The notes under the pieces are model-generated. The model ran no database searches. It was not told where the DNA came from and saw nothing but the letters and a program-made list of their open reading frames with translations. A DNA stretch of 64,000 bases from Macrostomum lignano (Eukaryota), in the NCBI GenBank assembly GCA_002269645.1, contig NIVC01003928.1, forward strand, positions 5,340 through 69,339, in the 5' to 3' direction. The stretch's first letter is position 1; each line of letters begins with the position of its first letter. Of this stretch, positions 3,001-32,737 are shown piece by piece. Position numbers and translations under genes: made by a program.

Positions 3001-5638
3001 GGTCTACAACCACCCTGCAGACCAAACTGAAGGGGATTTTTTCAAAAAAGCCCAACCCATGAAAAGCCTGATGAATTGTTTCCCAAGAGCAGCGGCCGCC
3101 CTGCATCCCGCGCGATATTGGGCCTCGACACGCAGATTGACTTGCACTGCACTGATAGGGACGAGCCAACCCGACTGCAAGGGAAGCCGGCTCGGAGATG
3201 TTGGGAATAAAGTAGCATTATTAAGTGGAAGAGGAGTTGAAATTTACCCCCTCTGCAGCTCAGAGCAGACGTCTCTCTTCAGCCAGCTTAGCAGCGTTCC
3301 AGCAATCGGGGTGGTTGGAAATATGTTCCATGAAAACGTCTTTGCTGAGAACTTCAATAATATAATTGCACTGGGCCACCCGGCCGTCAATCCGGCTCCC
3401 ATGACTTGGGCCTATCTGCCTATGCCAGTGTTTGCTTATCTCCTCACTTCAACCGGCCCACCCCAGCTTCATTCCTGAGTATTTGGGGCTCAGCGCGTCA
3501 CAGAGTGGCTTATATGGTTAACCTGCTCCCCTTGGCGACAATCGCTTCTCTTCCCCGACGGTTCTCGCAGCCCCGGACGGAATGCTGTCTGGGGCTTCTG
3601 TACTCTTCTTCTCTCAAGCCTCACACGGCTTCATTTCACACAGAGCTGCCTGCCTCCATCCTGCATTTCCTAGCACGGTTTGTTGCATATCTGGTACACA
3701 ATTATTGCCAGCAGCATCGCAATTCTGCTCATCCAAAATACCACTCAGTCGGAAATTCTGACAGCTACAATTTTGCACAGCAGTAATTTCTTTCTGTTAT
3801 AATTTTCACTCTGTCACTATGTCACTCACGTAAAGGTCAGATACTAGATAACTACATAATGTCACTTAAATCATAGTCACTCGATCACAATGTCACTCGA
3901 TCACAATGTCACTCGATCACAATGTCACTCGATCACAATATCACTCGATCACAATGTCCCTCGATCACAATTTCACTCAAACACAATGTCACTCGATCAC
4001 AATGTCACTCGATCACAATATCACTCGATCACAATGTCCCTCGATCACAATTTCACTCAAACACAATGTCACTCGATCACAATGTCACTCGATCACAATG
4101 TCCCTCGATCACAATGTCACTCGATCACAATGTCCCTCGATCACAATTTCACTCAAACACAATGTCACTCGATTACAATGTCACTCGATCACAATGTCAC
4201 TCGATCACAATGTCACTCGATCACAATGTCCCTCGATCACAATGTCACTCGATCACAATGTCCCTCGATCACAATTTCACTCAAACACAATGTCACTCGA
4301 TTACAATGTCACTCGATCACAATGTCACTCGATCACAATGTCACTCGATCACAATGTCCCTCGATCACAATGTCACTCGATCACAATGTCCCTCGATCAC
4401 AATTTCACTCAAACACAATGTCACTCGATTACAATGTCACTCGATCACAATGTCACTCGATCACAATGTCACTCGATCACAATGTCACTCGATCACAATG
4501 TCACTCGATCACAATGTCACTCGATCACAATGTCACTCGATCACAATGTCCCTCGATCCCAATGTCACTCGATCACAATTTCACTCAAACACAATGTCAC
4601 TCGGTCGGCATTGTTACTCTTAATCTGAACCTCGCAACTCCAACAGATCGGCAGCGGGGGCCCCTCTGGTTTCTCCCAGGACGTCCGTCACGTGGCCTTC
4701 CTCTGCTTGGCCTCGCCCTGGCCAACCTCCAGCCGAAGTCGCGGCAGTCACGGCCTCCTCGAGCTCGCCTGTCTGGCCGAGTCAACCAATCAGAATCTGG
4801 AGGAGACCCCGGGTTCGAGTCCTCTACTAGTCGTTAGCAGGTTAGTTTGATTTATCAACGCAACGATAATTTCATCACTAGGAAGATTTTGTCCCTAAGT
4901 AAATTTGTTCCCGCCATTGCGCAGCGACGGAGTGACCAAGTGCGGAGTCTTCTGCGTTCTGCACATGACCATGGACAAGATGCGCTACGAGGGCGAGGTG
5001 GACATCTTCCGGGCAGTCGAAAAGGTGAAGCGCAATCGGCCGCAGCTGGTTGGCAGCCAGGTGAGTTTTGGTTTCCGAGATTGGGCACCATCTGCCCAAT
5101 TTATTACTCTCTGATCGTAGTGCAGTATGAAAATTGTGGCCTTTCATGGGGTGTGCTAATGATGAAGCCTTCCGCGGGACAACCATGGCCAGCAGAGAAG
5201 TTGCTTCTGGCGCCTTCGATTTTCGCTAAAAACTCCTTTATTAGCGCGTCTGAAAGTGACTGACCTCCTCTGATAATAGCTCTTTCTGCTGCTTCCTGGG
5301 CGCTGGTTTTTGGGCTTCAAGCGTCCAAATTCATTCGCCACTGTTCACTCGCATTGCAGCAGGAGTATGAGCAGTGCTACTCCCTGGCGGAGCTGCTAGT
5401 CGAGTATTTCTTCTCTGGCCGGGTGTCCATCCAGGACAGTCAGAGCCTGCGGTTTCAGGACCTCGACCGAGTGCCTCCCGTCACCGGCCGGCCGGCCGCA
5501 ATCGCGGATTTTCGATTTCCAACGTCGCAACCCGACGCCGGCGGGATGGGGCGCCGTACCCTGGACGCTCTGCTGCTGCCCTGCGCCAGGCGGCGCCGGC
5601 GGGAGAGGCAGCTGCGATTGGCCGCCGCGATAGTGTGA
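3..5638 (+). CDS. Receptor-type protein tyrosine phosphatase, 3' part (end of D1 plus whole D2 domain); gene is 5'-partial
   Basis: Phase-consistent GT-AG exons: <3..327, 1551..1627, 1775..2037 (1-nt frameshift at ~1807), 4647..4840, 4925..5060, 5360..5638. Translation gives PTP hallmarks: IDILQQTLALRKARPGLVGNLSQYRFVY (D1 Q-loop region), STDFINAVYVD, YIVTQWPLKNTVCDFWKLI, PLLVVSSDGVTKCGVFC (degenerate P-loop), VDIFRAVEKVKRNRPQLVGSQQEYEQCY. Confidence 0.9.
584..970. repeat. 45-46 bp tandem repeat (~4.5 copies) plus an inverted-repeat arm; fold-back structure in PTP intron
   Basis: Unit ctaccgcccagagtagctatactgtcaagccagagtcacttgcgt at 584-790. Segment ~754-792 (gagtcacttgcgtcgaccgccccagagtcgtttcagagtcg) is an imperfect reverse complement of ~931-968 (cgactctaaaacgactctggggcgacacaagtgactc). 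Confidence 0.75.
3875..4602. repeat. 16-bp minisatellite (cacaatgtcactcgat)n in PTP intron
   Basis: About 45 directly visible copies with recurring variants (cacaatgtccctcgat, cacaatttcactcaaa). It produces the spurious MSLDHNVTRSQCHSIT ORFs. Confidence 0.95.
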
Positions 5639-7694
5639 TGTGACGTCATCACTATTATGTGAGAGCAGTAAAATGTTGGCATTTTGCTCAATGTACTGCT
5701 GCTTTGAATTATTCAGTAGTATACAGCGAAAAATTGCCCGATTGCCACTTTATACTGCTGGTATAACAATGATAACTCTTAGTTCCTACATTGAGTTTAA
5801 GCGAATTGCAAATAAGCATATGCCAGCCATCGTGAATAAAGATCCGAAGATAAACTGACTGCCTAGAAATTATTTTATTGTTTTTTATAAGCGCACAAAG
5901 TATCTATGATAAGCATGCACCTCTGTGAATGATTTTCTGAATGAATGAGATTTTGCATTCTTAGAGTTTTTTTCCTCTCAGTCTCCACTCTGTGTTCAAA
6001 GCCATCGTATCCAGGTCTCGTCTTATTTAGAGTTTCGAAAATATTTTCAGATTTCATGTAAACCATCCGTTACAAAAGTATTTTTGGAACAAATCCTCGA
6101 CCTTCAATTTTAATTTTCCTTTTGAAAAAAATTGTTAAATATATCAAATAAAATTTTGAAAACCTTACACGGTGTAAAAGTAAAATATCCGGAGATTTAA
6201 ATTTTATACCAGACGTTTTATTACCAGAAATCAACTGAATTAATTATCATCTATACAGCAATCTGTTTTTAGCATTAAAAAGGGTACTGAGAAACTGGTG
6301 GCAACGGAAGTGCAATTCTATTGTATTAAAAGACTCATAGTCGCACATGTATAAACATATCCTAGTACATGCATGTATGGCTGTAGTCCTTGTGTTCTTG
6401 AGCAAGGCACTACAAGTGAAATTTCTGATATTCAGCAGAAGTGACCAATTTATTTGTCCTTTGTAGAAAGAATCTTCACTCTGATAATTAAAGGGTATAC
6501 AGTGTTGTTTATGGGTCCGGTTAAAAGTTTGATAGAGCTGACCTAGACAATTACAAGTAACTTATAATAAACAGCGTGTACTTTAGCAGAGTATTATTAG
6601 TTGATGCTACATGTGGCGCCCGATTTTCTACATGCGGAGTGCATCTTACAACGATTAAGTGAGTTAGTGCAGTAAAATTCAGTCGGTGATCCGATGCCTA
6701 CTGGCGATCCGCCGCAGCATTTATGATATCCTTATTGCTCATGAAAGCGAAGCAGTGTGTCCCCAGAAGAAAAGCGGGAAAAATACGAAATAATAGGACC
6801 GTTCGTAAAAGCGTTTTAGCTTCCGAGAAACGTTCCCGTCAATTCAAAATATCCAAAATGCAAGAAACCGCGCGGCACGAGCGTACGTGCATATATTTAA
6901 TTTTTTGTCCCCAGTCGTAGCTACTGCTTGATTGGTGGCAATATTTAGTTACTTACTTTTTACTTGAAGGTAAACAAGCCACGAGTAGTCCTACTTTTGT
7001 GTAATTAAATCTACGGAAACAATTGTTCTTTGTTAATTGCCCATTCGATTCTTAATCTTGTGCTTAATTTTAAAATTCTTAATTTTAATGTCATCACAAA
7101 TTCTTGGAATACTTTATTTATTTGATTTAAAGACAAATCTTTAAAAGCATATTTTATTAAGTCATATAAAGACCTTAATAGTTGAAATTAAGAGTTTACA
7201 TAAATTCTGATATTTTCAGTGGGTCAGATTATTGTTTTCTTGGCTTTGATTAATTTCATTCTATTAAATAAGGCCATTTTACCAATATTAATAACTATAC
7301 AAGGTGTAAGCTGAACTCCAAGGACTATACTAAGCTCTGCAAAGTGAAATAAAAAACAAATTTATAATTAGCACAAAGTATTTTACCTATATTTTTGGCT
7401 TTAATGTTCACAAAAAAGTTTAAAAATATATCTATGCTTCACTTTGAAAATCTTTTTTATGCTTGTAGCTATTTATTCTAACAAATTCTTAGGAGTTTAA
7501 ATTTTGGCATTATCTTTCGCCTCAGAAATTTTAATTTAGCAATAGCATTTAAACATTTTAATTTTTTATTTACTTCCATATTTCAGTTTTTAAACTCTTG
7601 TAGTTTTGAATTGTTGATTCTTATTTTTAGCTGAATTTTTGGCTGATAGTCCTATCAAATGAGAATAAAATTTGCAGCAAATTAGACACAGAAA

Positions 7695-10600
7695 ATGCTT
7701 GTCACTGAAAGCACAGCTGAAGTGCTCCATGCAGACCTGTCCAGGTGGTCGGCCATCGACCCACCAGAGATTCCACTGTCTCCGATTGACTCCGTGATGC
7801 CGCCCTGTTACATCACCGCCATCTACGTGTTCAAGAATGCCAATGGGTTGGCAGACTTCATGCCGTTCGACTTGCTGTCCGAGGGCTTGAAGCTGGCCAT
7901 GGCCGACTTCCCGGATCTCAACTACCGGCTGAAGCGAAACTGCACCGGTGACTGCGTACTGGTGACCGAGAACTGCGGGGTCCGGCTGGTCACCGCCAAC
8001 GCCGACTTCTCGGCTGCCGACCTCGAGGCCATCAATTTCGACCCAGTCAGACTGCCGGCCAGCCTGCTGGATGGCAGCCCCGCTGACTGCGGACAGTTCG
8101 TGTGCAAGGTGCTGCTATGGGGGAGATGGGATTGGGGGTGGGGAAGATGGGATTGGGGGTGGGGAAGATGGGATTGAGGGTGGGGAAGATGGGATTGGGG
8201 TGGGGAAGATGGGATTGAGGGTGGGGAAGATGGGATTGAGGGTGGGAAGATGGGATTGAGGGTGGGGAAGATGGGATTGAGGGTGGGAAGATGGGATTGA
8301 GGGTGGGGAAGATGGGATTGAGGGTGGGATGATGGGATTGAGGGTAAGGGAAGATGGGATTGAGGGTGGGGAAGATGGGATTGAGGGTTGGAAGATGGGA
8401 TTGAGGGTGGGGAAGATGGGATTGAGGGTGGGGAATGGAATTGAGGGTGGGGAAGATGGGGTTTTGGGTGGGGGAGATGGAATTGAGGGTGGGGGAGATG
8501 GAATTGAGGGTGGGGGAGATGGAATTGAGGGTGGGGTGAGATGGGCTCGGTTAGGGTCATGGTAGCGGAGATGGGATAATTGAGTTGGGATCGTAATGTA
8601 AAATCGCACGCACCCGCAGTTCAAGCTGACCCGCCTGTCCGACAACTCTGTGGCGCTGGGCGTCCTGCTGCACCATAACGTGATGGACGGAGACGGCGCC
8701 TTCGGCTTTATCAACAGGTGCGCTTGGAGAAGTTACTCCGTGCGAAGCTAACAAGCACACGAACCACTGAAGGAGCAGATGGTACGCTTGCAAGGTATCA
8801 AAATCCAACTTGTAAATTGTGAAATCTATCAAAAACGCCAGGTGGGCCGGCATCTGCCGGGAGCTGCGACAGCGGGGAGGTCGGCCCGCCGAACCGGAGC
8901 TGCAGCGGCCGCCGGTGTCCCGCGACCGGTCGGTGCTGAAGCCCGACGGCGTCCCGTCAAGTGTCGACCACCAAGGTCGCGAGTACGCCTACGTGGAGCC
9001 GCAGCCGGCGCCCGAGCCCGAGGTCAAGCCGACGCTGCCAGTAACCCAGGCGCCGCAATTCACGGCCCGTCTGTTCCACCTGAGCGCGGATTTTCTGGCC
9101 CGACTGAAGAACAGTGTTAATAGCGAGCCGGGCGAGCAGGTCAGGGAGAGGGGCTCGGTGCGAGATCCCAGCAGATAGCGGGACTTTAATTGTTTGGGTG
9201 GCAGAAGCTCGTCGCTGGAGGGATTTAGTAGGCAAGTTGGTTGTTGTGGACGCCAAGTTTGTTGTCAGGGACGCCAAGTTGGTTGTCAGGGACGCCAAAG
9301 TTTGTTGTCAAAGACGCCAAGTTTGTTGTCAGGGACGCCAAGTTTGTTGTCAGGGACGCCAAGTTGGTTGTCAGGGACGCCAAGTTGGTTGTCAGGGACG
9401 CCAAGTTGGTTGTCAGGGACGCCAAGTTGGTTGTCAGGGACGCCAAGTTGGTTGTCAGGGACGCCAAGTTGGTTGTCAGGGACGCCAAATTAGTGGTCAG
9501 GGACGCCAAGTTGGTTGTCAGGAACGCCAAGTTGGTTGTCAGGGACGCCAAGTTGGTTGTCAGGGACGCCAAAGTTTGTTGTCAGGGACGCCAAATTGGT
9601 TGTCAGGGACGCCAAAGTTTGTTGTCAAAGACGCCAAGTTTGTTGTCAGGGACGCCAAGTTTGTTGTCGGGGACGCCAAGTTGGTTGTCAGGGACGCCAA
9701 GTTGGTTGTCAGGGACGCCAAGTTGGTTTTCAGGGACGCCAAAGTTTGTTGTCAGGGACGCCAAGTTGGTTGTCAGGGACGCCAAAGTTTGTTGTCAAAG
9801 ACGCCAAGTTTGTTGTCAGGGACGCCAAGTTGGTTGTCAGGGACGCCAAGTTGGTTGTCAGGGACGCCAAGTTGGTTGTCAGGGACGCCAAATTAGTGGT
9901 CAGGGACGCCAAGTTGGTTGTCAGGAACGCCAAGTTGGTTGTCAGGGACGCCAAGTTGGTTGTCAGGGACGCCAAAGTTTGTTGTCAGGGACGCCAAGTT
10001 GGTTGTCAGGGACGCCAAAGTTTGTTGTCAAAGACGCCAAGTTTGTTGTCAGGGACGCCAAGTTGGTTGTCAGGGACGCCAAGTTGGTTGTCAGGGACGC
10101 CAAGTTGGTTTTCAGGGACGCCAAAGTTTGTTGTCAGGGACGCCAAGTTGGTTGTCAGGGACGCCAAAGTTTGTTGTCAAAGACGCCAAGTTTGTTGTCA
10201 GGGACGCCAAGTTTGTTGTCGGGGACGCCAAGTTGGTTGTCAGGGACGCCAAGTTGGTTGTCAGGGACGCCAAAGTTTGTTGTCAGGGACGCCAAATTGG
10301 TTGTCAGGGACGCCAAAGTTTGTTGTCAAAGACGCCAAGTTTGTTGTCAGGGACGCCAAGTTTGTTGTCGGGGACGCCAAGTTGGTTGTCAGGGACGCCA
10401 AGTTGGTTGTCAGGGACGCCAAGTTGGTTGTCAGGGACGCCAATTTGGTTGTCAGGGACGCCAAGTTGGTTGTCAGGAACGCCAAGTTTGTTGTCAGGGA
10501 CGCCAAATTGGTTGTCAGGGACGCCAAATTTGTTGTCAGGGACACCGAGCTATGGTTATCAGGGTTGCTAAGTTGGTTGTCAGGGTCGTCCCTCAAGTTT

Positions 10601-12497
10601 GAGGTCAGACACTCAAGCTTTGCCTTTCATGTCTTTTAAGCTCAAAATCTTTTGCCTGAGTGACAATACTTTTAGCAAACGCTTTCACAACATTTTCGCT
10701 TTACACTCCTTTCTTGTTACTCGCCTAGTGTCGAGCGTTCTTTATTATTTGTTATTCATAAGTGATCTAGCCACGTCGGGTTTCAGTTGGCACTCCTTAC
10801 GTTAGCGAGGAACAAGTTCTTATTCTGACTTTATTTCAGTTTTTTATCTTATCAAGACGCCGGTCTGCCAGAAACGGTAGAGGGCTGCATGAGACCCAAT
10901 TTTTAATTTGTTTTATCTTCTCCAGCTCAACTAGTACGTGGGGTCATAGCTAGCAATGTGTGTGACAGTTTCTGAGTAGGGAGGAACAAAATTCTTTTCG
11001 ACTTAATTTTATGCTACTCGTTAGTAAGCGATGTCTGTTCTGTTTAAAGAGGTTCAACAGCCTTAACTAATATCTCCCAGAGATTATGAATTTGAGCGTC
11101 AAGTTTGGTGTGTCAGTGGCTTTAAGTTGGGGTGTCAGTGGCTTAAGTTGTGTGTCAGTGGCTTCAAGTTGGGGTGGGGTGTCAGTGGCTTCAAGTTGTG
11201 TGTCAGTGGCTTCAAATTGTGTGTCAGTGGCTTCAAGTTGTGTGTCAGTGGCTTCAAGTTGTGTGTCAGTGGCTTCAAGTTGGGGTGTCAGTGGCTTAAG
11301 TTGTGTGTCAGTGGCTTAAGTTGTGTGTCAGTGGCTTCAAGTTGGGGTGTCAGTGGCTTCAAGTTGGGGTGTCAGTGGCTTAAGTTGTGTGTCAGTGGCT
11401 TCAAGTTGGGGTGTCAGTGGCTTCAAGTTGTGTGTCAGTTGTTGCTATTGAAGTGCTTGTTAGAAAGTCCTTATGGGGTGTCAGGATGGCGCCAGTTCAG
11501 TGGGTGTCAGGATGGCGCCAGTTCAGTGGGTGTCAGGATGTCGCCAGTTCAGTGGGTGTCAGAATGGCGCCAGTGCAGTGGGTGTCAGGATGTCGCCAGT
11601 TCAGTGGGTGTCAGGATGGCGCCAGTGCAGTGGGTGTCAGGATGTCGCCAGTTCAGTGGGTGTCAGGATGGCGCCAGTGCAGTGGGTGTCAGGATGTCGC
11701 CAGTTCAGTGGGTGTCAGGATGGCGCCAGTGCAGTGGGTGTCAGGATGGCGCCAGTGCAGTGGGTGTCAGGATGGCGCCAGTGCAGTGGGTGTCAGGATG
11801 GCGCCAGTGCAGTGGGTGTCAGGATGGCGCCAGTTCAGTGGGTGTCAGGATGGCGCCAGTTCAGTGGGTGTCAGGATGTCGCCAGTTCCTACCAGTGTGA
11901 ATTACCAGCAGCTCCTGCCCGCCCCTGCAGCCCGCGGTCCAGTGCACCACCAACGACTGCTTGGTGGCGCTGCTGTGGCGCTGCGTCACGAAGGCAAAGC
12001 GGCTGCCCGCCGACGCGCCAACGAAATTCGCCATGGCCTGCAACGCCCGCCAGCGCCTGTCGCTGCCGGCCGGCTACGCTGGCAACGCGAATTTCTACAT
12101 CGCCGACCAGCTGACGACTGGCGAGGTGGCCGACGGCCTCAGCCTGGCCAGCCTGGCTCGCCGGGTTCGCGCCGCGGTGTCGCACGGCACGGCGCCGGAC
12201 TACCTGCGCTCCATCCTGCGCTGGCTGGCCGAGCGGCCCGACCGGTCGCGCATCCTGCCGGGCTTCCGGATGTTCGCCAACGACCTGGCCTTCACTTCCT
12301 GGGTGCACTTTCCCGTCTACGAGGCCGACTTCGGCTGGGGCCGGCCGTTGCGATTCGCCGTGCCGAGCGCCGGATTCGACGGCCTCGCCGTCCTGATGCC
12401 GAGGTTCGACGGCGACGGCTACGATGTGCTGACCGGCTGCGAGGTGGACGCGATGGACCGGCTGGCGGCCATGCCGGAGCTGGCGAGACCGACTTAG
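7695..12497 (+). CDS. BAHD / transferase-family (PF02458-type) acyl-CoA-dependent acyltransferase, 458 aa, 4 exons
   Basis: Exons 7695..8108, 8620..8717, 8842..9139, 11931..12497 total 1377 nt with phases 0/2/0 all matching and all introns GT-AG. Motifs: N-terminal LSPIDSVMPPCY and LKLAMADFPDLNYRL; catalytic LLHHNVMDGDG (HxxxDG); PVSRDRSVL; TTNDCLVALLW; PAGYAGNA; DLAFTSW..VYEADFGWGRP. Confidence 0.93.
8121..8545. repeat. ~21-bp G-rich minisatellite (gggattgagggtggggaagat)n filling BAHD intron 1
   Basis: About 20 visible copies starting ~12 nt after the donor at 8109. Confidence 0.95.
9232..10585. repeat. 21/22-bp minisatellite (gttggttgtcagggacgccaa)n with higher-order blocks, BAHD intron 3
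   Basis: About 63 copies. The rare variant tagtggtcagggacgccaa occurs at 9491 and 9894, implying a ~403-bp higher-order duplication. Confidence 0.95.
11100..11440. repeat. ~21-bp minisatellite (gtgtcagtggcttcaagttgt)n, BAHD intron 3
   Basis: Directly visible tandem copies. Confidence 0.9.
11475..11888. repeat. 26-bp minisatellite (gggtgtcaggatggcgccagttcagt)n, BAHD intron 3
   Basis: About 16 copies ending ~40 nt before the acceptor at 11930. Confidence 0.93.
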
Positions 12498-13289
12498 GGC
12501 CTTCGGATCTGTGCCCTGTCTACCGAATATGCTTAGGTGGAGTTTTAGGTTTTACCCACAGAGATTTTTACTGCAATAGTATAGTGCTCAATGAATTGAC
12601 AGCATAATTGACAGGGACCTAATTATTGACTAATTATCGCAGAGTGAACCGTCTCGCTTGCGGAATCGCGCAATTATCTCCTACTTAAAGTCCCCCCCAA
12701 TAGAGCCAGAAAATTGTCACCAATTACCCAGAAGTTTCGTCAGTTTTTATGGAGTTTATTGCGTCTGATTTTGTTGATTTTCAGTCCAATCAAAAGAATT
12801 CAAAATTTTCTAAACAAATAAATCAGAACTCTCGCTCTAATTCCAAGTAAATATGCTCCCCATTTCTCCCTTGCAAATTTATTTCTTTTATTTTAGGCTT
12901 CAACAATGACAGGGTGCTAACTACTTAACAAAATCCAAGCTTTATTTCGCTAGAAGCAATCAAATCAATAATTTTACTAAATTTATAACACAGAGACGGT
13001 ACAGCGCGGCAGACACTGGCAAAGCTACAGCTAATTAATCCACAATGGCTTGCTGTGATGGGGTTTGTGACCAAAGGAACTGCTGTAAGTGCTGTTGGCT
13101 TGCTCAAACTTATAGGCATGTAGGATTTGGTCTCTCAGTGACTGTGAGAACTGGGAAATTTGACGCAAAAAATAACTAGCTGATGCATGGGTTTGTACTG
13201 TCTGCATTCATGAGACGGACGAGAAGAAAGGAGCGAGACGCTGGAGAGACGTGAGACTGATATGATGGGACTGAGAAGGCTGACAGGTC

Positions 13290-15509: not shown

Positions 15510-17232
15510 CTAGAAGGACGCCGCCGCCGCTCCGCTGCCTGTCGTAGCGGCGGCGGTGGCGGCGGCTGCGGCGCCAACCTGCCTGAAGATATGGCCGGCC
15601 GGCTTGACAAAGTGGAAGTCCTGCGCCCGGCAGTGGGCGCACGCGGCCGCCTGGCTGAAGTGGGAGAAGGCGCTGGGCAGCTCGGCGGAGTCCTTCACGG
15701 CTGGCCGGCGGCAGTGGGCGCACATCAGGCGGTCCGGGCAGCACGGGCAGCAGGCGAACACATCAAACAGGTAGACACCGCCAATCAGCAGGTGGGAGCC
15801 GTCCCAGACTCGCTGGCAGAACCGGCAGCGGCTGTGCAGGGTGGACACGCAGGCGCAGTGCATGCAGACAGCGTGCAGGTAGCCTTTGCCGCAGGCTGGG
15901 CTGTCCTTGTTGTGGCGCAGCGGGCTGAGGAAGAAGGTGCCGTCCACCAGGGGGAAGTGGTCGTAGACGGGCATCTGGCGGGAGCAGAGGACGCAGGCGA
16001 CGGTCGGGCAGCGGCAGGCAGTCAGGGTGGTGAGCACCAGAGACTTGAGCTCGTCATTCTCTGTTGAGCTGTCGTCCTCGGTGACAATGTGGAACTTGTT
16101 CTGCTTCCAGCGGGGCAGCGCCTTCAGACTGTCGTAGTTGTCGCTGCGCCTCTGGAAGATGTTGCCCCGGCTGTGGCCGCCGCCGCTGGCCGAAGCCGCG
16201 GCCGCGGCAGTGTAGACAGGCGAGGAGAAGGGCAGCGGGGCGCCGGGCGCGTTGCCGTCGGTCTGCGGCGGGCTCAGGCTGAAGTTGCCGCTCTGGTTGG
16301 ACGAGTTGCTGAGGTGCCGGAACCGTCTGCTGATCATGTCGGTCGGGCTGTAGGAGGAGCCGCCGGCCACCAGGCCGTTGGTCTGGCGCTTGCGGACCCC
16401 GGCGGCGATGAGCTGCGGCGGCGACTGCCGGGTGTCCCGGCTGACCTGGCCGCGGCCGCAGGGGCACCGGATCTTTCCCATGGTGCCAGGGGCGCGCAGT
16501 TTGGAGGCGTTGAGCAGGACGCGCTCCCAGCGGCCAAAACAGTCAGCATGGGCCCACAGGCCTGGTTGGGAGAGATCATGTTTGTGACACGACAAGTAAA
16601 CGGCGGGAGTAACTATATCCCCTCGGCCTCGTCATATTATTAGTCTCTAATGATGAGTGGAAATTTTCAAGTCAATACTAATTGCAAGGACTACTCAATT
16701 AATCCTTGAGTAGTCCTTGGTCTGTTGAAATGGGTGGCATTAAGAAACACAAAATACAATTAGAAACGTTTCAATTTTAGCACAGGGGATCTGTACTGTG
16801 TTTGCGCAATTCACTAAGTACATGCATGCTTGTAAGTTTCTGGCTTTTTAGCGTAATATAATCCTTGCCAAAGGGAGCCAGAGAATGCTTCACAGTTTTG
16901 AACAATTCATCACTTCGGTTTTCTCTACTTTCACCTTTGTCAATCGATTTTTTGGTGCTAAGTTGCTTTGCACTTTAAATAAACAGCCGAGCTGCTTGCT
17001 GATTGACTGACTCACTGTGACTGCAGTGCGCGTTGGAGCAGACCAGCTTGACAGCGTCGCCTGGCTCGTCGGGATCAATCATGAGATCGCCGGGGTCCAG
17101 GCAGCCGTTCAGCGCGTGGCCCGGCTTGCTGGGGTCCGGCTCGGCGTGCAGGCAGCAGGGAACACCCGGCGACACGGCGATGCCGTTCTCCACGGGTGAC
17201 TCGGAAGCTTTGCGCACTCGACTGCTGGACAT
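15510..17232 (-). CDS. HECA: Headcase homolog (HECA/hdc family), ~422 aa, 2 coding exons
   Basis: Exons 17232..17016 and 16561..15510, phase 1, GT-AG. N-terminal domain VKLVCSNAHC..WAHADCFGRWE..CPCGRGQVSRD. C-terminal domain CPTVACVLCSRQMPVYDHFPLVDGTFFLSP, HAVCMHC, WDGSHLLIGGVYLFDVFACCPCCPDRLMCAHC, FSHFSQAAACAHCRAQDFHFVKP. Confidence 0.9.
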
Positions 17233-19752: not shown

Positions 19753-19800
<48 letters not shown>

Positions 19801-25296: not shown

Positions 25297-28200
25297 TCAA
25301 ACGTAGGTATTGTTAGTCCGCTCGGCGGCATTCATCTGGGCCAGCTGCTTCAGCGGCAGCAGTAGAAAGGTGTCCATGTCGCGGTTGTGCTTGCCCAGCG
25401 AGTTCACCCGGTAGTGCGCGACCAGCTCCTCCAGGCTGGGGAACGAGGTCGGACTGACGTAGTCGAAGCCGCACCGGCCGGTCTGCTGCTGGCCGGCGCC
25501 CAGCTCCATGAAGATCTTGCAGAAGCGGACACCGCACGGACTGCGGACGGACAGCACTAGGCTCTCCTCGCCACCTGAGCGAGACGCGTGAATCAGGAAG
25601 GTGCCGATTGGCGCATTGTCCAGATGGCGCAGCAGCGGGTCGGCCTTGGTGATCTGCCTGTCCAGCCAGTCGGCGGGGTCCCACGGCGCCGCGGAGGTCG
25701 AACCCACCGGGTCCTCGGCCAGCGACAGTCGCTCGAAGCTGTCGGCGCAGCCGGGGAAGTAGCCGCCGAGATTGGCGGCGTCCTCGGCGTCCACCGTCTC
25801 GCGCAGCACGCCGTACAGGGTCATCAGGATGGCCTTGAGGCGGATGCGCTTCTCCTGGATTGCGCGAACGTCTCCGCGCATCGTGCGCACCTCGGCCTGC
25901 ATCACCTGGCTATCGTGCCGGATCCGCTGCGCCTCCTTCTCGGCCGCTTCCTGCCTGGACCGGTACATCTGCATGCGGCTCACCTGCGGAATGGGCGGCG
26001 GGGGTGGCTTTATGGGTTGCCAGCGGTATGCTGCTTGCGGGATCAGGTAGAAACAGGTGAGGAGAAGGGAGCATAGGGAGAATCCAGATGGGAGCATAGG
26101 GAGAATCCAGATGGGATCATAGGGAGAATCCAGATGGGAGCATAGGGAGAATCCAGATGGGGATCGAGGGAACCCATATGGGGATCAGGGGAGAATCAAT
26201 ATGGGGATTAAGGGAAAATTCCGAGAATACCGATACTCACGATTCCACTCCAATAAACTTATCACTCACCTGCGAGTCCCGATTGGTCTTCATGAGCTGT
26301 TCCAGAGCACTGCGCCGCTCAATGAGTCTGTCCATCTTGGCGATATTGTTGGTAAGGGTGAGCACGACCTGCGAGTAGCACTTAGCGCCGCGCTCCGCCT
26401 CCAGCTGCTGATCCTTTAGCGTTCCCATAGTAACAATGTTCTCGTCCATCTTTGTAAACACGTCGGAGATTTCGCGACCCATTTCTTGGTAGAGGGTCAG
26501 CAGCTCCTGCCTCATCTGGGCGGGAAAACCAATTCGAGATGGGATCAATACGACTCATACGAGCCTCATGCGCCCCATCACTCGATTCTTCCCATCTCCA
26601 CAATCTTCCCCCTTTCCGTCACTCCAATTCTTCCCCTTTCTCGTCACTCCAATTCTACCCCTTTCTCGTCATTCCAATTCTTCCCATTCCCGTTACTTCA
26701 ATTCTTCCTCTTTCCTGTCACCCCCAATTCTTCTCCTTTCTCGTCACTCCAATTCTTCCCCATTCTCAAAAAAATAATCTTCCCCCTTTCTCGTCACTCC
26801 CAATTCTTCCTCTTTATCGTCACTCCCATTTTTCCCCTTTCTCGACCCTCCAATTCTTCCCCTTTCCTGTCACTCAAATTCTTCCCTTTTCTCGTCACCC
26901 CAATGCTTCCTCTTTCTCGTCACCCCAATTCTTCCCCATTCTCGTCACTCCTAATTCTTCCCCTTTCTCGTCACCACAATTCTTCCCCTTTCCTGTCACT
27001 CAAATTCTTCCCTTTTCTCGTCACCTTAATTCTTCCCCTTTCTCGTAAATCGAATTCTCCCCTTTCCTGTCACTCAAATTCTTCCCCCTTTCTCGTCCCT
27101 ACCAAATCTCTCTTTTCTCGTCACTCTAATTTTTCCCCTTTCTCTTAAATGCAATTCTTCCGCATTCTCTGACTCTAATTCTTCCCCACACCCTGCAACC
27201 CAAATTCCTCCCCTACGAGTGAACAGCAAAACACAGATCCCCAGCTCACTTCTTCGCTGTTCCCCTTGGAGGCAGATTCAGCTGGGCAGCCTGCAAACTT
27301 GCTAATGGGATAGAGGAGCAACACGTCCAGGTTGTTATTGTACTCGCGCAGCGAATTGTAGGTGTAGTGATTGATGACCTGGGCTACCGTGTAGAACTCG
27401 GTGGCCCGCTCGGAGAAGCCGTACGTGACCCGGTCGCCGGTCTTGTAGCGCGGATAGATTCTAATCAGCTTGTTCTCGCCGTCCTTCTTCAGAGTCAGCG
27501 TGTAGCCGCCGCTCATGTTGGCGGCGTTGCGCACTAGGAATGAGCCGTCCGGCCGGTTGGCCAGCACGGCTTGAACCTCCGACTTGGAGATGTCGCCCCA
27601 GTACCACGGTTGCTCGGGCAGGGAGATGTGATCCACCTGCGGGATGGCGCAGCGGTTGCTTTTAGTTGTCAAGCCGGTTTCACTTATGAGCTAGTTGCTA
27701 GGCAGTTCTGGGGATTGGATATAATTGGGGTTGGGGTTTGAGATCGGGAATCGGGATAGTGATGGGATTTGAGATTGGAAATCAGGACACTGATGGGATT
27801 TGAGATTGGGAATCGGGACAGCGATGGGATTTGAGATTGGGAATCGGGACAGTGATGGGATTTGAGATTGGGAATCGGGACAGTGATGGGATTTGAGATT
27901 GAGAATGTGGATGGGATTTGAGATTGGGAATCTGGATGGGATTTGAGATTGGGAATCATGATGGGATTTGAGATTGGGAATCATGATGGGATTTGAGATT
28001 GGGAATCTGGACAGTGATGGGATTTGAGATTGAGAATCGGGATGGGATTTGAGATTGGGAATCGGGATGGGATTTAAGATTGAGAATCTGGATGGGATTT
28101 GAGATTGGGAATCAGGATGGCATTTGAGATTGGAAATCGGGATGGGATTTGAGATTGAGAATCTGGATGGGATTTGAGATTGGGAATCATGATGGGATTT

Positions 28201-31200
28201 GAGATTGGGAATCTGGATGGGATTTGAGATTGGGAATCATGATGGGATTTGAGATTGGGAATCTGGATGGGATTTGAGATTGGGAATCATGATGGGATTT
28301 GAGATTGGGAATCAAGATGGGATTTGAGATTGGGAATCTGGATGGGATTTGAGATTGAGAATCTGGATGGGATTTGAGATTGGGAATCATGATGGGATTT
28401 GAGATTGGGAATCTGGATGGGATTTGAGATTGGGAATCATGATGGGATTTGAGAATGGGAATCATGATGGGATTTGAGATTGGGAATCTGGATGGGATTT
28501 GAGATTGGGAATCTGGATGGGATTTGAGATTGGGAATCTGGATGGGATTTGAGATTGGGAATCTGGATGGGATTTGAGATTGGGAATCTGGATGGGATTT
28601 GAGATTGGGAATCTGGATGGGATTTGAGATCAGAAATCTGGATGGGATTTGAGATTGGGAATCGGGATGGGATTTGAGATTGGGAATCTGGATGGGATTT
28701 GAGATCAGAAATCTGGATGGGATTTGAGATTGGAAATCAGGACACTGATGGGATTTGAGATTGGGAATCGGGATGGGATTTGAGATTGGGAATCTGGATG
28801 GGATTTGAGATTGGGAATCTAGATGGGATTTGAGATTGGGAATCTGGATGGGATTTGAGATTGGGAATCCGGATGGGATTTGAGATTGGGAATCTGGATG
28901 GGATTTGAGATCAGAAATCTGGATGGGATTTGAGATTGGGAATCGGGATGGGATTTGAGATTGGGAATCTGGATGGGATTTGAGATCAGAAATCTGGATG
29001 GGATTTGAGATTGGGAATCATGATGGGATTTGAGATTGGGAATCGGGATGGGATTTGAGATTGGGAATCGGGATGGAATTTGAGATTGGGAATTGGGACA
29101 GTGATGGGATTTGAGATTGGGAATCGGGATGGGATTTGAGATTGGGAATCGGGATGGGATTTGAGATTGGGAATCGGGATGGGATTTAGGATTGGGAATC
29201 TGGATGGGATTTGGGATTGGGAATCTAGATGGGATTTGGGATTGGGAATCTGGATGGGATTTGAGATTGGGAATCGGGATGGGATTTGAGATTGGGAATC
29301 GGGACAGTGATACGATACGATACAGTAACTGTAGGGTATAGGACCAAGGAAGGCTCACAACCACCCCAGGGAGACAGCAGCCAGACTGAGGAACGAACCT
29401 GAGACGGGTCGTTAAGCACCAGAAATGAAGGCAGCACGCAGCCCCAGCGGCCGTGGGACAGCACCCCCTTGGCAACGTCGTGCAATGGCACAACACAAGG
29501 CCGACTGTGCTCGCCGGCCACCATCCCGGTCACTCGGGACCAGGCCGGACGGAGCAGCAGCTGGCCGAAAACGCGCGACCACGAAATGAAATACTGACGG
29601 TCGGCGTTTCGAACCCGCCTGAAGATCTGCACAAAGTGGCACATGAGGTGCTGCAGAGTAGCCCTATGATGGTCGGGGGCCTCCGACAGCAGACGGCGGA
29701 GCTCCACGGCCTGCTGATGCAGCTGGCTGGCAGGCAGGTCCATGAGGCGGACGAATCTGCGCGGGAGGCGAGTGACAGATTCGCTGGGGTGAGAGGGCGA
29801 CTCTCTGGGATGAGAGGGCGACTCTCTGGGATGAGAGGGCGACTCTCTGGGATGAGAGGGCGACTCTCTGGGATGAGAGGGCGACTCTCTGGGATGAGAG
29901 GGCGACTCTCTGGGATGAGAGGGCGACTCTCTAGGGTAAGAGGGCGAATCTCTAGAATGAGAGGGCGACTCTCTGGGATGAGAGGGCGACTCTCTGGGAT
30001 GAGAGGGCGACTCTCTGGGATGAGAGGGCGACTCTCTGGGATGAGAGGGCGACTCGTTGGTATGAGAGGGCGACTCTCTGACAGGTAGGAAGCGATTCTC
30101 AGACTTGGAACTCTCTGATGCGCCAATGCCAGCCTTCAGTCTCACTTGTCGTAGTGCTGGCAGGGCAGCAGTGAGGTCGGCAGCTCCTGCAGCCACAGTT
30201 TGAGCAGCTGGGCCGCCAACTTGCCGTCCAGTTTATTAAACGCGGCCGGCCCAACTCCGCAGCCGAAGTCGGCGCGAAGGGCTTCAACGTCGGCGGCGGT
30301 CCGCCTGAAACGGTAGAACTGCAGCAGGTCGCCTGGATAAGTGAGGCTCTCCCGCTCCACTGTGTAAGTGCACAGCCGGACAATATAGGGCACCAGGTGC
30401 GAGGCCGCCTCCGGTGCCATGGAGTCGGGCGCGTCGGACAGAGCCGGCTGGTCAGAGTGGGCCAGGCTGTCGTACACGTTGGTGGAGTCGGCGTAGTTGT
30501 CCAGCTTGCGGCGAAAGCTCTCGTCTGGCAGCTGCTGCTCGCCTGCGGCTACCTGCTCATCAATGGACGCGCCGAACACGATGGACGGCACCATAGGCGG
30601 CACGGTGGGTCGGCAGGATTCGTCACCTTCAGCACCGGTTGCCCCCCACCGGTGAAACCTGGCGCAGTGCCGATGCGCGACCCGGCCGCAGACGGTGCAC
30701 TGCAGGCCCTGCTGGTAGATGCCCAGCAGCCGGAGCCCGCAAGCTGCGCACTCAGTCTGGTGTCCGGCAAAGCTGGCCAGCCGCATCCGATGCCCGGCCG
30801 GACTGTCCGGATGTCCGAGCCGCCACTCGGTTCCGGCTTTGTCCGCCTCTGGCCAGTCGCGGTAGCCGGCCAGCAGTTGCTCCAAGGCGGCCGAGATCGC
30901 CCGCCGGTGCGGTACATCCTGCATCCGCCAGTCCTTCTCCAGCACCTGGTCCGTGAGACCGCGGAGGCACGCGCCGCCTGTTCGGAGTTGAAAGGGGCGG
31001 CGATGAGGAATCGAGAGTTTGGATTCCGAATTTACAAATCCCAAAAGTGTGGGAATGGTTTTCAACCCACATGAACTGCAGATTACACCAGATACAGATC
31101 CCAAAACAGTAAAGCCATAGATCCCAAAACAGTAAAGCCACAGATCCCGATGAATAAAAGCCAATCAACAGCAGCCATCAGTTACCCGGGAAGCCCCGCT

Positions 31201-32737
31201 GGCCGAGATATTTGCAGCAAGAGTCCAAGAACCGGCTGAGGTTGGCAACGCACAGCCACTCCAGCACCATGCGGCTGGTCCAGGCTTCCACCAGCACGGG
31301 TTCCCAGTGCAAATACAGGTAGTGAGAATCGTCCGGCGGCGGGGCGAAGCCGTCGCAACCGACCAGAAGCTGCGACCCGGCGCCCGCCTCGGAGTCAGCA
31401 ACGTCGCCGTATTTGTCGTCGACATCGCCGGAAGCCGCCGCCACAGCAGCGGCTGTACAGGACAGGTGAAAGACGCGCTTGCAGACGGCGCACTGCGCGG
31501 CGCCGCAGTTCCACAGATAGTCCTGGCACAGGGTGCAATAGCGCGGGCCGGACACGAACACGGTCGGGCCGCCAGGCAGGGCGTGCCGCCGTCGCTCCCG
31601 ACTGCTGCTGGCCGCGGAGTCGCCACTGCTGCTGTCCGAGAGCTGAGGGCCTGACAAGCCTGGCATATTGGGATATGGGATCAAAATTGGGGACGTTGCA
31701 AACTGGGAAACAGTGGGAATAGGATGGGGATCACAGTGCGAATAGGGTGGGGATCACAGTGCGAATAGGATGGGGATCACAGTGGGAATAGAATGGGGAT
31801 CACAGTGCGAATAGGGTGGGGATCACAGTGCGAATAGGATGGGGATCACAGTGGGAATAGGGTGGGGATCAGTGGGAATTGGGTGGGGATCACAGTGCGA
31901 ATAGGGTGGGGATCACAGTGGGAATATGGTGGGGATCAGTGGGAATTGGGTGGGGATCACAGTGCGAATAGGGTGGGGATCACAGTGCGAATAGGATAGG
32001 GATCACAGTGGGAATAGGGTGGGGATCACAGTGGGAATAGGGTGGGGATCACAGTGGGAATAGGGTGGGGATCACAGTGGGAATATGGTGGGGATCAGTG
32101 GGAATAGGGTGGGGATTACAGTGGAAATAGGGTGGGGATTACAGTGGAAATAGGGTCGAGATCACAGTGGGAATTGGGTGGGGATCAGAGTGGGAATTGG
32201 GTGGGGATCGCACAGTGGGAATTGGGTGGGGATCGCACAGTGGGAATTGGGTGGGGATCGCACAGTGGGAATTGGGTGGGGATCGCACAGTGGGAATTGG
32301 GTGGGGATCACAGTGGGAATAGTTTGGGGATTACAGTGGAAATAGGATTGGGTTACTGAGTAAGAGTATTCTGAGTAGCCAGGGTATCTTCAACCAATCA
32401 AAACAAGCAAAGAGCACAAAGCAAGGTCTGGAGAGTTGCCAGGATCAAGGAGAGAGAGAGCACTCCCGCCCTTACCAGCGTCAGTGGAGGGGTCATCCGC
32501 CTGCACCAGCTGCAGATACTTGGTGGGCACCAGGCCCTCCCGATTCTGATAGCGCACCCGGCAGGTGCCAGGCAGGACTGCGGTGGACACCGAAGACTCC
32601 GCAGGTGCCAAGCCAATCAGCTGAGCCCCAGCCTCCAGCACAGAGATGAAGCCAGCGGCCACTTCCTCATCGCTAGGAATAAATGGCTGCAGACAGCGAT
32701 AGACAATGGCTAATGGTTTTGGTGGCTCTGTGGCCAT
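25297..32737 (-). CDS. PIK3R-like: PI3K class IA regulatory subunit p85-like, ~1099 aa (SH3-C1-SAM-C1-RhoGAP-nSH2-iSH2-cSH2), 7 exons
   Basis: Exons 32737..32476, 31659..31186, 30977..30146, 29756..29399, 27690..27250, 26515..26270 and 25983..25297 total 3300 nt with all phases matching. The nSH2 WYWGDISKSEVQAVLANRPDGSFLVRNA..GYTLTLKKDGENKLIRI..YNNNLDVLLLYPISKF closely matches the p85 nSH2. Also present: two H-x-C-x2-C..C-x2-C..H-x2-C C1 motifs, SAM WTSRMVLEWL..LTDQVL..HRRAI, and RhoGAP VPYIVRLC..FYR..LLKLWLQELPTSLL. Confidence 0.9.
26600..27180. repeat. Degenerate ~25-bp CT-rich minisatellite (tcgtcactccaattcttcccctttc)n, p85 intron 5
   Basis: Visible tandem copies. Confidence 0.85.
27715..29310. 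repeat. 25-bp minisatellite (gggatttgagattgggaatctggat)n, p85 intron 4
   Basis: About 60 copies filling nearly the whole intron. Confidence 0.95.
29785..30080. repeat. 21-bp minisatellite (gagagggcgactctctgggat)n, p85 intron 3
   Basis: About 14 copies; it produces the ESPSHPR repeat ORF. Confidence 0.95.
31725..32350. repeat. ~23-bp G-rich minisatellite (gggaatagggtggggatcacagt)n, p85 intron 1
   Basis: About 27 visible copies. Confidence 0.93.

What the first reader, a model, noticed from the sequence alone, without database searches (positions are those of the whole stretch)
7695..12497. Intact plant/fungal-type BAHD acyltransferase embedded as a spliced gene in an animal-like genome (candidate domesticated HGT)
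Seen in sequence: a 458-aa ORF with both BAHD signatures (HHNVMDG = HxxxDG, and C-terminal DFGWG), plus YAGNA and TSW motifs. It has three phase-consistent GT-AG introns, two filled with the same kind of minisatellite as neighbouring introns, and GC-rich codons like its neighbours. It lies between unmistakably metazoan genes (receptor PTP, headcase, p85). Established: BAHD transferases acylate specialised metabolites in plants and fungi and are not part of the normal metazoan gene set; a known exception is the plant-derived phenolic glucoside malonyltransferase of whitefly, used for detoxification. Inference: an old horizontal acquisition now used for xenobiotic detoxification (e.g. dietary algal or diatom compounds) or small-molecule biosynthesis. 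Host-type introns and contiguity argue against contamination.
Basis: partly seen in the sequence, partly recalled or inferred. Interest (0 to 1): 0.88.

Follow-up and report, generated by a model that had tools for sequence, protein, structure and literature searches.

The report
Flatworm gene for a plant/fungal-type acyltransferase
The flatworm Macrostomum lignano carries an intact, spliced, apparently expressed gene for a BAHD acyltransferase, an enzyme family typical of plants and fungi; it is clearly part of the worm's genome, but whether it was acquired by horizontal transfer or belongs to a rare old animal lineage also seen in a hydroid is not settled.

Summary
Window 7695-12497 (+) holds four exons and three GT-AG introns that encode a 458-aa protein. 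It matches Pfam PF02458 over its full length (E 1e-45) and has HHNVMDG and DFGWG motifs and a plant-HCT-like fold. The window is Macrostomum lignano contig NIVC01003928.1, and the model equals GenBank PAA49264.1, which derives from RNA-seq.

Contamination is excluded. Three intact copies lie in the same PTP / BAHD / headcase / p85-like synteny on contigs up to 722 kb. Codon usage matches the neighbours (RSCU r 0.93). Changes between copies are biased towards synonymous (9 S : 5 N, p 0.003).

The best hit is the fungus Basidiobolus (35-38% identity), not a plant. BAHD genes also exist in a cnidarian (Hydractinia). My ML analysis places the flatworm gene next to that cnidarian-type clade more often than anywhere else, but bootstrap support is weak (about 35-55%).

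Ancient transfer from a fungus-like eukaryote remains the leading explanation (about 0.55). A rare, mostly lost animal lineage is a serious rival. The substrate is unknown. The protein is not a canonical shikimate HCT and not like the whitefly malonyltransferase.

The parts
7695..8108 (+). Exon 1 (codons 1-138), N-terminal half of BAHD domain 1; starts at ATG 7695
   Evidence: tblastn; identical to PAA49264.1
8109..8619 (+). Intron 1, GT..AG, phase 0, 511 bp; filled by a 21-bp minisatellite (8118-8545, 20.6 copies). Its length differs in the other two genomic copies (824 and 245 bp)
8620..8717 (+). Exon 2 (98 nt) carrying the catalytic HxxxD motif HHNVMDG at 8671-8691 (His157, Asp161)
   Evidence: H157 and D161 invariant in alignments
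8718..8841 (+). Intron 2, GT..AG, phase 2, 124 bp, no repeats; 97.6-99.2% identical between copies
8842..9139 (+). Exon 3 (298 nt): end of domain 1, the Pro/Glu-rich disordered crossover loop (residues about 182-241, pLDDT < 50) and the start of domain 2
9140..11930 (+). Intron 3, GT..AG, phase 0, 2791 bp; three minisatellite arrays (9233-10585 21 bp x 63.8; 11099-11439 21 bp x 15.8; 11476-11888 26 bp x 15.9). It is 1653 and 1197 bp in the other copies
11931..12497 (+). Exon 4 (567 nt including the TAG stop): domain 2 with YAGNA (codons 319-323), TSW (392-394) and DFGWG (12327-12341)
4905..5114 (+). Upstream neighbour: exon of a protein-tyrosine phosphatase gene (context only)
   Evidence: PF00102, E 3e-7
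15510..16595 (-). Downstream neighbour: headcase gene main exon (context; same neighbour in all three genomic copies)
25297..32737 (-). Next neighbour: p85-like gene with two C1, RhoGAP and two SH2 domains (context; syntenic in the other copies)

Best explanation
This is a genuine, transcribed and selectively maintained Macrostomum lignano nuclear gene (locus tag BOX15_Mlig030323g4). It encodes a cytosolic BAHD-family acyl-CoA-dependent acyltransferase.

Mechanism, inferred from the family: His157 of HHNVMDG sits in the channel between the two chloramphenicol-acetyltransferase-like domains. It deprotonates a hydroxyl or amine of a small-molecule acceptor, which then attacks the thioester of an acyl-CoA to give an ester or amide plus CoA. 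DFGWG is structural.

Origin, my best inference: an ancient horizontal acquisition from a non-plant eukaryote related to early-diverging (zygomycete-type) fungi. The gene has since been fully domesticated: it gained three spliceosomal introns, those introns were invaded by host minisatellites, codon usage converged on the host, and the gene was copied along with the worm's recent genome and chromosome duplications. The same or a parallel event may underlie the BAHD genes of hydrozoans.

Shown: gene structure, family membership, fold, genomic residence, three syntenic copies and a bias towards synonymous change. Inferred: catalytic activity, cytosolic location, horizontal origin and donor type. 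Unknown: acyl donor, acceptor and biological role.
For: Family and fold:
- PF02458 E 1e-45 over the full length.
- Full-length sequence hits to solved plant HCT structures, E 3e-38.
- AlphaFold model with pLDDT 74.7 and pTM 0.76; Foldseek TM 0.78-0.84 to HCTs, E 8e-35.
- H157, D161, D403, F404, G405 and G407 conserved.

Residence in the host genome:
- The window equals NIVC01003928.1 with 0 mismatches over 22.5 kb.
- Two further copies lie on 722-kb and 426-kb contigs with the same headcase and p85-like neighbours and the same three intron positions.
- An independent older assembly gives the same protein (UniProt A0A1I8JM83 and A0A1I8INC0).
- The GenBank annotation of this assembly was built from an RNA-seq-guided transcriptome (PMC5730564), and its model equals mine.
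- GC3 is 0.86 and RSCU correlates at r 0.93 with the neighbours.

Selection:
- All three copies are intact.
- 9 synonymous and 5 non-synonymous variable codons, against 74% non-synonymous sites (binomial p 0.0026); pairwise dN/dS 0.11-0.24.

Foreign-looking distribution:
- No relative above 50% identity outside M. lignano.
- Best hits are Basidiobolus (247 bits, E 4e-68), Pythium, Endogone, Phalansterium and Riccia.
- The only identified animal hit in the top 150 is Hydractinia at E 5e-23. That gives an alien-index-type difference of about 104 natural-log units.
- With long-branch taxa removed, the flatworm + cnidarian-type group sits next to Basidiobolus inside a zygomycete-type group (aBayes 0.94 and 0.99).
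- No paper in the library mentions the gene.
Against: No donor clade is identified. Identity to anything is at most 38%. My ML bootstrap (24 replicates) gives no supported sister group, and NJ is unresolved.

The most frequent sister is a clade that contains real cnidarian genes. This fits an old animal lineage as well as it fits transfer.

Most of the 150 best hits could not be assigned to an organism, so further animal homologues may be hidden among them. Other Macrostomum or flatworm data may simply be missing from the databases. Even M. lignano RNA-seq contigs are absent from the 90% cluster.

The selection test rests on only 14 changes. Expression is inferred from how the annotation was made, not from reads I saw. 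No substrate evidence exists.
Confidence: 0.6

Rival explanations
1. Rare ancient animal (or opisthokont) BAHD lineage. The gene descends vertically from an ancestor shared with cnidarians, and ultimately with early-diverging fungi. It has been lost in almost all other animals. On this reading there was no transfer into the flatworm lineage.
For: - Hydractinia symbiolongicarpus has at least 3 BAHD loci on chromosome-scale scaffolds.
- In ML the flatworm gene groups with the clade that holds them: aBayes 0.987; placement likelihood weight 0.86 + 0.12; RELL 0.62 + 0.17.
- The grouping survives removal of P0018, of the Hydractinia subclade, or of long-branch taxa (aBayes 0.956-1.0).
- It is the plurality result in bootstraps.
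- M. lignano and all cnidarian-type sequences share a 2-residue deletion before LPxxYxGN.
- The next relatives are fungi (Basidiobolus, Martensiomyces, Endogone), as expected for opisthokont descent.
- The family also occurs in Amoebozoa and oomycetes, so it is old in eukaryotes.
Against: - Bootstrap support is only about 17-21% for the exact clades and 54% for a loose clade. Stricter trimming dissolves the specific grouping.
- The shared deletion also occurs in the chytrid Hyaloraphidium and not in P0018.
- No intron is shared: the Hydractinia, ERZ25072740 and P0018 genes are intronless.
- This reading needs dozens of independent losses across Metazoa.
- The flatworm protein scores far higher against Basidiobolus (246 bits) than against any cnidarian-type protein (at most 150 bits).
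- The comparison set was selected by similarity to the flatworm protein, which biases reciprocal ranks.
Confidence: 0.25
2. Direct plant-to-animal transfer of the whitefly BtPMaT1 type, for example from algal or plant food.
For: The best solved-structure matches are plant HCTs. Plant sequences (Riccia, Ginkgo, Turnera) are among the top hits. The DFGWG motif is the plant-typical form. There is a precedent in Bemisia (PMC9599486).
Against: - Solved BAHD structures are almost all from plants, so that ranking is a sampling effect.
- In ML, plant sequences form their own group away from the flatworm gene, and every placement outside the cnidarian-type/Martensiomyces neighbourhood is worse by dlnL > 17.
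- Identity to plants is about 31%, against 40-84% for whitefly genes to their plant hits.
- Similarity to malonyltransferases is marginal (2xr7 E 3e-6).
Confidence: 0.05
3. Decaying or function-less relic: a transcribed pseudogene-like passenger without enzymatic function.
For: No direct expression or activity data were seen here. The long low-complexity loop (residues 182-241) is disordered. The HCT arginine handle is not conserved.
Against: All three copies keep a complete ORF, all splice sites and all catalytic motifs. Changes between copies are biased towards synonymous (p 0.0026). A disordered crossover loop is normal for BAHDs.
Confidence: 0.07
4. Contaminant DNA or an assembly chimera.
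For: None beyond the unusual taxonomic affinity.
Against: Three contigs (69, 426 and 722 kb) show the same synteny with metazoan genes. A second independent assembly contains the gene. The introns, minisatellites and codon usage are host-type.
Confidence: 0.01

Closest known systems
Plant hydroxycinnamoyl-CoA:shikimate/quinate hydroxycinnamoyltransferases (HCT; clade V BAHDs; PDB 5FAL, 4KE4, 5KJT, 4G0B)
   Same: Full-length alignment at 25-29% identity (E 3e-38). Same two-domain fold (TM 0.78-0.84). HxxxD, TSW and DFGWG sit at equivalent positions.
   Different: The residue aligned to the 'arginine handle', which binds the shikimate carboxylate (AtHCT R356, from my own knowledge of Levsh et al. 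2016), is Pro380 in a low-confidence loop. The same Pro is seen in the fungal and other top hits. The host is an animal without a phenylpropanoid pathway. The gene is not nested among plant sequences in ML.
Uncharacterised BAHD-like 'transferase' of Basidiobolus meristosporus (ORX94943.1) and relatives in Endogone and Martensiomyces (early-diverging fungi)
   Same: Highest similarity of any named protein (35-38% identity, 246-247 bits, full length). Same motifs. Adjacent in ML once long-branch taxa are removed.
   Different: Divergence is still deep. Basidiobolus has closer relatives than the flatworm protein (M. lignano ranks 5th for it). The function of these fungal proteins is unknown.
Hydractinia symbiolongicarpus BAHD-like genes (LOC130647511, LOC130647513, LOC130636699) and related intronless genes on ERZ25072740 contigs
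   Same: Animal-encoded PF02458 proteins. They are the plurality ML sister group and share a 2-residue deletion with the flatworm protein.
   Different: Only 22-27% identical. They are intronless, whereas the flatworm gene has three introns. Their motif is DFG(L/Y/S)G instead of DFGWG. They lie in AT-rich DNA (GC3 0.28 against 0.86). The relationship is not statistically supported.
Whitefly BtPMaT1/BtPMaT2 (plant-derived BAHD phenolic glucoside malonyltransferases)
   Same: A BAHD gene functioning in an animal genome after a presumed eukaryote-to-animal transfer (PMC9599486).
   Different: The whitefly genes are clearly nested in plants and belong to the malonyltransferase type. The flatworm protein is HCT-like and barely similar to malonyltransferases (E 3e-6 to 2e-5). 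It is far more diverged from any candidate donor, and it has no known diet-related rationale.

Membership tests
BAHD acyltransferase superfamily (Pfam PF02458 'Transferase') | Significant full-length match to the family profile | tested here: met
   E 1.1e-45, 156.6 bits against a cut-off of 22.7; profile positions 20-427 of 434
BAHD acyltransferase superfamily (Pfam PF02458 'Transferase') | Catalytic HxxxD motif in the middle of the protein | tested here: met
   H156-H157-N-V-M-D161-G162; H157 and D161 are invariant in alignments with 6 to 29 homologues
BAHD acyltransferase superfamily (Pfam PF02458 'Transferase') | C-terminal DFGWG structural motif | tested here: met
   D403-F-G-W-G407 at window 12327-12341
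BAHD acyltransferase superfamily (Pfam PF02458 'Transferase') | Two chloramphenicol-acetyltransferase-like domains joined by a crossover loop | tested here: met
   AlphaFold2 model with pLDDT 74.7 and pTM 0.76 from a shallow 12-sequence alignment. Foldseek top 50 are all BAHD structures, TM 0.78-0.84 to HCTs. The loop at 202-241 is disordered
BAHD acyltransferase superfamily (Pfam PF02458 'Transferase') | Acyl-CoA-dependent O- or N-acyl transfer activity | not testable with these tools
   Needs recombinant enzyme assays
Shikimate/quinate HCT subfamily | Arginine handle that binds the acceptor carboxylate (AtHCT R356 equivalent) | tested here: not met
   In the HMMER alignment to 5FAL the equivalent residue is Pro380, with Arg at 377 and 383 nearby. 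That loop (376-384) has pLDDT < 50, so the alignment there is uncertain
Whitefly-type plant-derived malonyltransferase (BtPMaT1-like) | Closest similarity to, and nesting within, plant phenolic glucoside or anthocyanin malonyltransferases | tested here: not met
   Malonyltransferase structures 2XR7 and 2E1T score only E 3e-6 to 2e-5, against 3e-38 for HCTs. There is no plant nesting in ML
Horizontally acquired gene in an animal | Physically integrated in host chromosomes next to vertically inherited genes | tested here: met
   Three syntenic copies on contigs of 69-722 kb, lying between PTP, headcase and p85-like genes
Horizontally acquired gene in an animal | Absent from related animals (patchy distribution) | tested here: inconclusive
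   There is no relative above 50% identity in 5.8 billion proteins, and only Hydractinia was identified among animals. However, most top hits could not be named, and coverage of other flatworms in the databases is unknown
Horizontally acquired gene in an animal | Phylogenetic nesting within a donor clade with statistical support | tested here: not met
   No supported sister group. ML bootstrap is at most 21% for any exact clade, and NJ at most 35%. The alien-index-type score is high (about 104), but the fast-evolving cnidarian clade confounds it

The most novel reading that the evidence does not exclude
Flatworm and hydrozoan BAHD genes (plus unassigned intronless genes in GCA_024449895.1 and ERZ25072740) form one old 'animal BAHD' lineage whose nearest relatives are BAHDs of zygomycete-type fungi. 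Either the enzyme family was present in the cnidarian-bilaterian ancestor, by opisthokont inheritance or a single very early fungus-to-animal transfer, and was lost almost everywhere else; or animal-associated early-diverging fungi (Zoopagomycota-like) have repeatedly donated it to invertebrates. In both cases some animals would have an unrecognised acyl-CoA-dependent specialised-metabolite acylation capacity.
Probability: 0.3. Interest if true: 0.72.

Novelty: new member of a known kind. Interest (0 to 1): 0.55.

Why it matters
BAHD acyltransferases build esters and amides of specialised metabolites in plants and fungi. Animals are generally thought to lack them. The one characterised exception (whitefly BtPMaT1) turned out to be a key detoxification adaptation.

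A domesticated BAHD in M. lignano is experimentally tractable, because this flatworm has transgenesis, RNAi and expression atlases. Study of it could reveal an unknown small-molecule pathway in a flatworm, such as diet detoxification, acylated polyamines or phenolics, or secretions.

The link to hydrozoan BAHDs raises a second question: whether animals retain or repeatedly acquire this enzyme family. That bears on how often eukaryote-to-animal gene transfer happens, and on how reliable alien-index screens are.

Tried and rejected
- Word-indexed protein searches were nearly blind for this divergent family. They returned 4, 7 and 4 hits, even with a 30-sequence profile. The exhaustive HMMER search was needed, but it carries no names, and only 20 hits could be named.
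A scan of bacterial and archaeal genomes with the Logan homologue P0013 found nothing, so a bacterial source for that relative is not indicated.
- A Kimura-distance NJ tree with 200 bootstraps was unresolved. I therefore wrote a small ML program (BLOSUM62-derived rate matrix, 4 gamma categories, NNI search). It recovers the plant, oomycete and ascomycete-like groups, but its aBayes values proved overconfident compared with its own bootstraps.
- The sigma-70 promoter and terminator scan of the upstream region showed no enrichment and is irrelevant for a eukaryote.
- Literature searches for the locus tag, the assembly accessions, BAHD + Macrostomum, BAHD + cnidaria, and Hydractinia + HGT + acyltransferase returned nothing relevant.
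- I considered and rejected the idea that the three copies are a gene-family expansion. They are syntenic duplicates, consistent with the known redundancy of the DV1 assembly.
- I could not identify the organisms behind GCA_024449895.1 (P0018) or ERZ25072740.

Full report
**1. What is there**

Reading window 7400-12800 and splicing exons 7695-8108, 8620-8717, 8842-9139 and 11931-12497 gives a 1377-nt reading frame of 458 codons plus stop. The three introns are GT..AG, in phases 0, 2 and 0.

- HHNVMDG at 8671-8691
- DFGWG at 12327-12341
- YAGNA at codons 319-323
- TSW at codons 392-394

No second copy lies in the window.

**2. Family membership**

The protein matches Pfam PF02458 (Transferase, the BAHD family) over essentially the whole profile, with E 1.1e-45. 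It aligns end to end with solved plant hydroxycinnamoyltransferases at E 3e-38.

An AlphaFold2 model was built from a shallow alignment (mean pLDDT 74.7, pTM 0.76). It has the two-domain BAHD fold with a disordered crossover loop at residues 202-241. All 50 Foldseek matches listed are BAHD structures, led by HCTs at TM 0.78-0.84.

H157, D161 and the DFG.G residues are conserved in every alignment I made. It is therefore a BAHD acyltransferase with an intact catalytic apparatus.

It is not a canonical shikimate HCT. The residue aligned to the HCT arginine handle is Pro380, although that loop is poorly modelled. Similarity to malonyltransferases of the whitefly/plant type is marginal.

**3. Whose genome**

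The protein is identical to GenBank PAA49264.1 (BOX15_Mlig030323g4) of Macrostomum lignano. The window matches contig NIVC01003928.1 of assembly GCA_002269645.1 without a mismatch over 22.5 kb.

Two more copies exist, on contigs of 722 kb and 426 kb. Each is followed by headcase and the p85-like SH2/RhoGAP gene. Each has the same three intron positions, but the intron lengths differ because the minisatellites differ in copy number. The older independent assembly also contains the gene (UniProt A0A1I8JM83 and others).

The genome paper reports 180 Mb of >=95% identical duplicated blocks in this line. It also states that the GenBank annotation is a filtered RNA-seq-guided transcriptome assembly (PMC5730564). 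The three copies are therefore duplicated-chromosome copies, not a family expansion. The deposited model, which is identical to mine, is indirect evidence for transcription and for these splice junctions.

The neighbours are ordinary animal genes:
- a tyrosine-phosphatase exon
- headcase (E 3e-59)
- a p85-like gene with C1, RhoGAP and two SH2 domains
- further along, a methyltransferase, a malate-dehydrogenase-like gene and a 3-hydroxyacyl-CoA-dehydrogenase-like gene

Codon usage is indistinguishable from the neighbours: GC3 is 0.86 against 0.59-0.89, and RSCU correlates at r 0.93. Minisatellites of 16-58-bp period fill introns and spacers throughout the region. Contamination or chimerism can be dismissed.

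**4. Is the gene maintained?**

All three copies are intact. Among them, 14 codons vary: 9 synonymously and 5 non-synonymously. About 74% of sites are non-synonymous, so the one-sided binomial p is 0.0026. Pairwise dN/dS is 0.11-0.24. The numbers are small, but they point to purifying selection.

**5. Relatives**

The word-indexed search found nothing above 50% identity outside M. lignano. The exhaustive HMMER search of 1.84 billion cluster representatives found 2792 homologues. The best were:
- the fungus Basidiobolus meristosporus (E 3.8e-68, 35-38% identity)
- a multi-domain plant protein (Turnera)
- Pythium oligandrum
- an unassigned Logan contig
- Endogone
- the amoebozoan Phalansterium
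- the liverwort Riccia

The family is therefore widespread in eukaryotes, and the flatworm protein is not close to any of them.

Naming ten more hits showed that one of them, P0117, is from the cnidarian Hydractinia symbiolongicarpus. That species has at least three loci on chromosome-scale scaffolds, and at least one of them is intronless. Related intronless genes occur on AT-rich, gene-poor contigs of ENA assembly ERZ25072740. Their base composition is the same as that of the Hydractinia locus. Another relative, P0018, lies on a 5.3-kb contig of GCA_024449895.1. I could not determine the organism for either assembly.

**6. Phylogeny**

A simple NJ tree was unresolved. No tree software was installed, so I wrote a small ML program: a BLOSUM62-derived exchange matrix, empirical frequencies, four gamma categories and NNI search. 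I ran it on 57 sequences and 418 columns. It recovers sensible plant, oomycete and ascomycete-like groups.

Main result: the flatworm protein is sister to P0018 plus the Hydractinia-containing clade (local aBayes 0.987). In an attachment-point scan on the fixed backbone:
- this placement and the one next to P0018 take 0.98 of the likelihood weight
- they take 0.79 of the RELL replicates
- placements among plants, ascomycete-like sequences or the chytrid group are worse by more than 17 log-likelihood units; a placement directly beside Basidiobolus is not among the 12 best attachment points

Robustness:
- The grouping survives removal of P0018, of the Hydractinia subclade, or of long-branch taxa.
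- With long-branch taxa removed, the next relatives are Basidiobolus and then an Endogone-containing group.
- With stricter column trimming, the flatworm protein instead joins P0018 and Martensiomyces inside a larger clade that still includes the cnidarian-type sequences.

Real ML bootstraps (24 replicates) are sobering:
- the exact clades appear in only 17-21% of replicates
- a loose clade of at most 13 taxa holding both the flatworm and the cnidarian-type sequences appears in 54%
- Basidiobolus is sister in 4%

A 2-residue deletion is shared by the flatworm and all cnidarian-type sequences. It also occurs in a chytrid and is absent from P0018.

My reading is that the cnidarian-type clade is the single most likely neighbour, with zygomycete-type fungi next, but this is not statistically established. 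Plant ancestry is disfavoured.

**7. Interpretation**

The secure part (about 0.9) is that M. lignano has a resident, intact, probably expressed and constrained BAHD acyltransferase gene.

For the origin I favour an ancient horizontal acquisition from a fungus-like eukaryote (about 0.55). The reasons are:
- the family is missing from nearly all animals, as far as these searches show
- the best hits are non-animal by a wide margin (about 104 natural-log units of E-value)
- the nearest named lineages (Basidiobolus, Martensiomyces) belong to fungal groups that, to my knowledge, are often associated with animals

The main rival (about 0.25) is a rare old animal/opisthokont lineage shared with hydrozoans and lost elsewhere. 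Either way the event is old: three introns were gained, codon usage is fully host-like, and identity to anything known is at most 38%.

The biochemical role is open. By family mechanism the protein should transfer an acyl group from an acyl-CoA to a hydroxyl or amine of a small molecule, with His157 as the base. Nothing here identifies donor or acceptor. The detoxification idea is only an analogy with the whitefly (PMC9599486).

**8. Novelty**

The gene is already in GenBank as 'hypothetical protein' and in UniProt as 'Transferase'. I found no paper that mentions it, BAHDs in flatworms, or BAHDs in cnidarians.

It is a new member of a known kind: a BAHD enzyme, and an animal gene of probably foreign origin. 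The possible common lineage with hydrozoan genes is an extra point of interest.

Noticed in passing
L007 10001-11326 (Hydractinia symbiolongicarpus CM055238.1); proteins P0117, P0165, P0168: A cnidarian has at least three PF02458 (BAHD-like) loci on chromosome-scale scaffolds, and at least one is an intronless 441-codon ORF. I found no literature on them. They are 50% identical to each other, so they have been in that lineage for a long time.
   Followed up: partly
L005 10001-11299 and L006 3902-5209 (ENA ERZ25072740 contigs); L008 2397-3743 (GCA_024449895.1 JAANSX012346775.1): Intronless BAHD genes sit alone in gene-poor eukaryotic DNA of unidentified organisms. The ERZ contigs have the same GC (32%) and gene GC3 (0.29) as the Hydractinia locus. 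These genes are the nearest ML neighbours of the flatworm gene.
   Followed up: partly
window 9116-9139: A UniProt entry from the older assembly (A0A1I8FGT2, 416 aa) lacks residues VNSEPGEQ. This corresponds to an in-frame alternative GT donor 24 nt upstream of the exon-3 donor (GTTAAT at 9116). It may be an alternative splice form or a prediction artefact.
   Followed up: no
window 7650-7694: A T-rich tract ending in TTTGCAG lies about 18 nt upstream of the start codon. This is a plausible spliced-leader trans-splice acceptor, since 39% of M. lignano genes are trans-spliced according to PMC5730564. It was not testable here.
   Followed up: no
window 19425-21026: Three tandem units of about 640-660 bp each carry the same 101-codon ORF on + and an 81-87-codon ORF with a poly-Ala run on -. 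This is a long-period tandem repeat of unknown nature.
   Followed up: no
window 25297-32737 (-): The p85-like neighbour combines two C1 (phorbol-ester/DAG-type) domains with RhoGAP and two SH2 domains (1089 aa in the GenBank model). This architecture is not that of canonical p85.
   Followed up: no
window 3876-4603, 8118-8545, 9233-10585, 13308-15284, 26596-29304, 41084-42692, 55720-56260: Minisatellites create many long spurious ORFs in several frames (up to 453 codons). One of them gives a false Pfam hit (herpesvirus gp350 C-terminal) inside the malate-dehydrogenase-like ORF 56594-57592. ORF lists in this genome need repeat masking.
   Followed up: partly
L001 (Logan SRR30952543 contig, 13.1 kb): The fourth-best homologue (P0013, 33-35% identity) sits in a compact, apparently intron-poor gene array (adh_short, AbfB/DUF5695). 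No close relative was found in 185,579 bacterial and archaeal genomes, so it is probably from an unsampled fungus-like eukaryote.
   Followed up: partly
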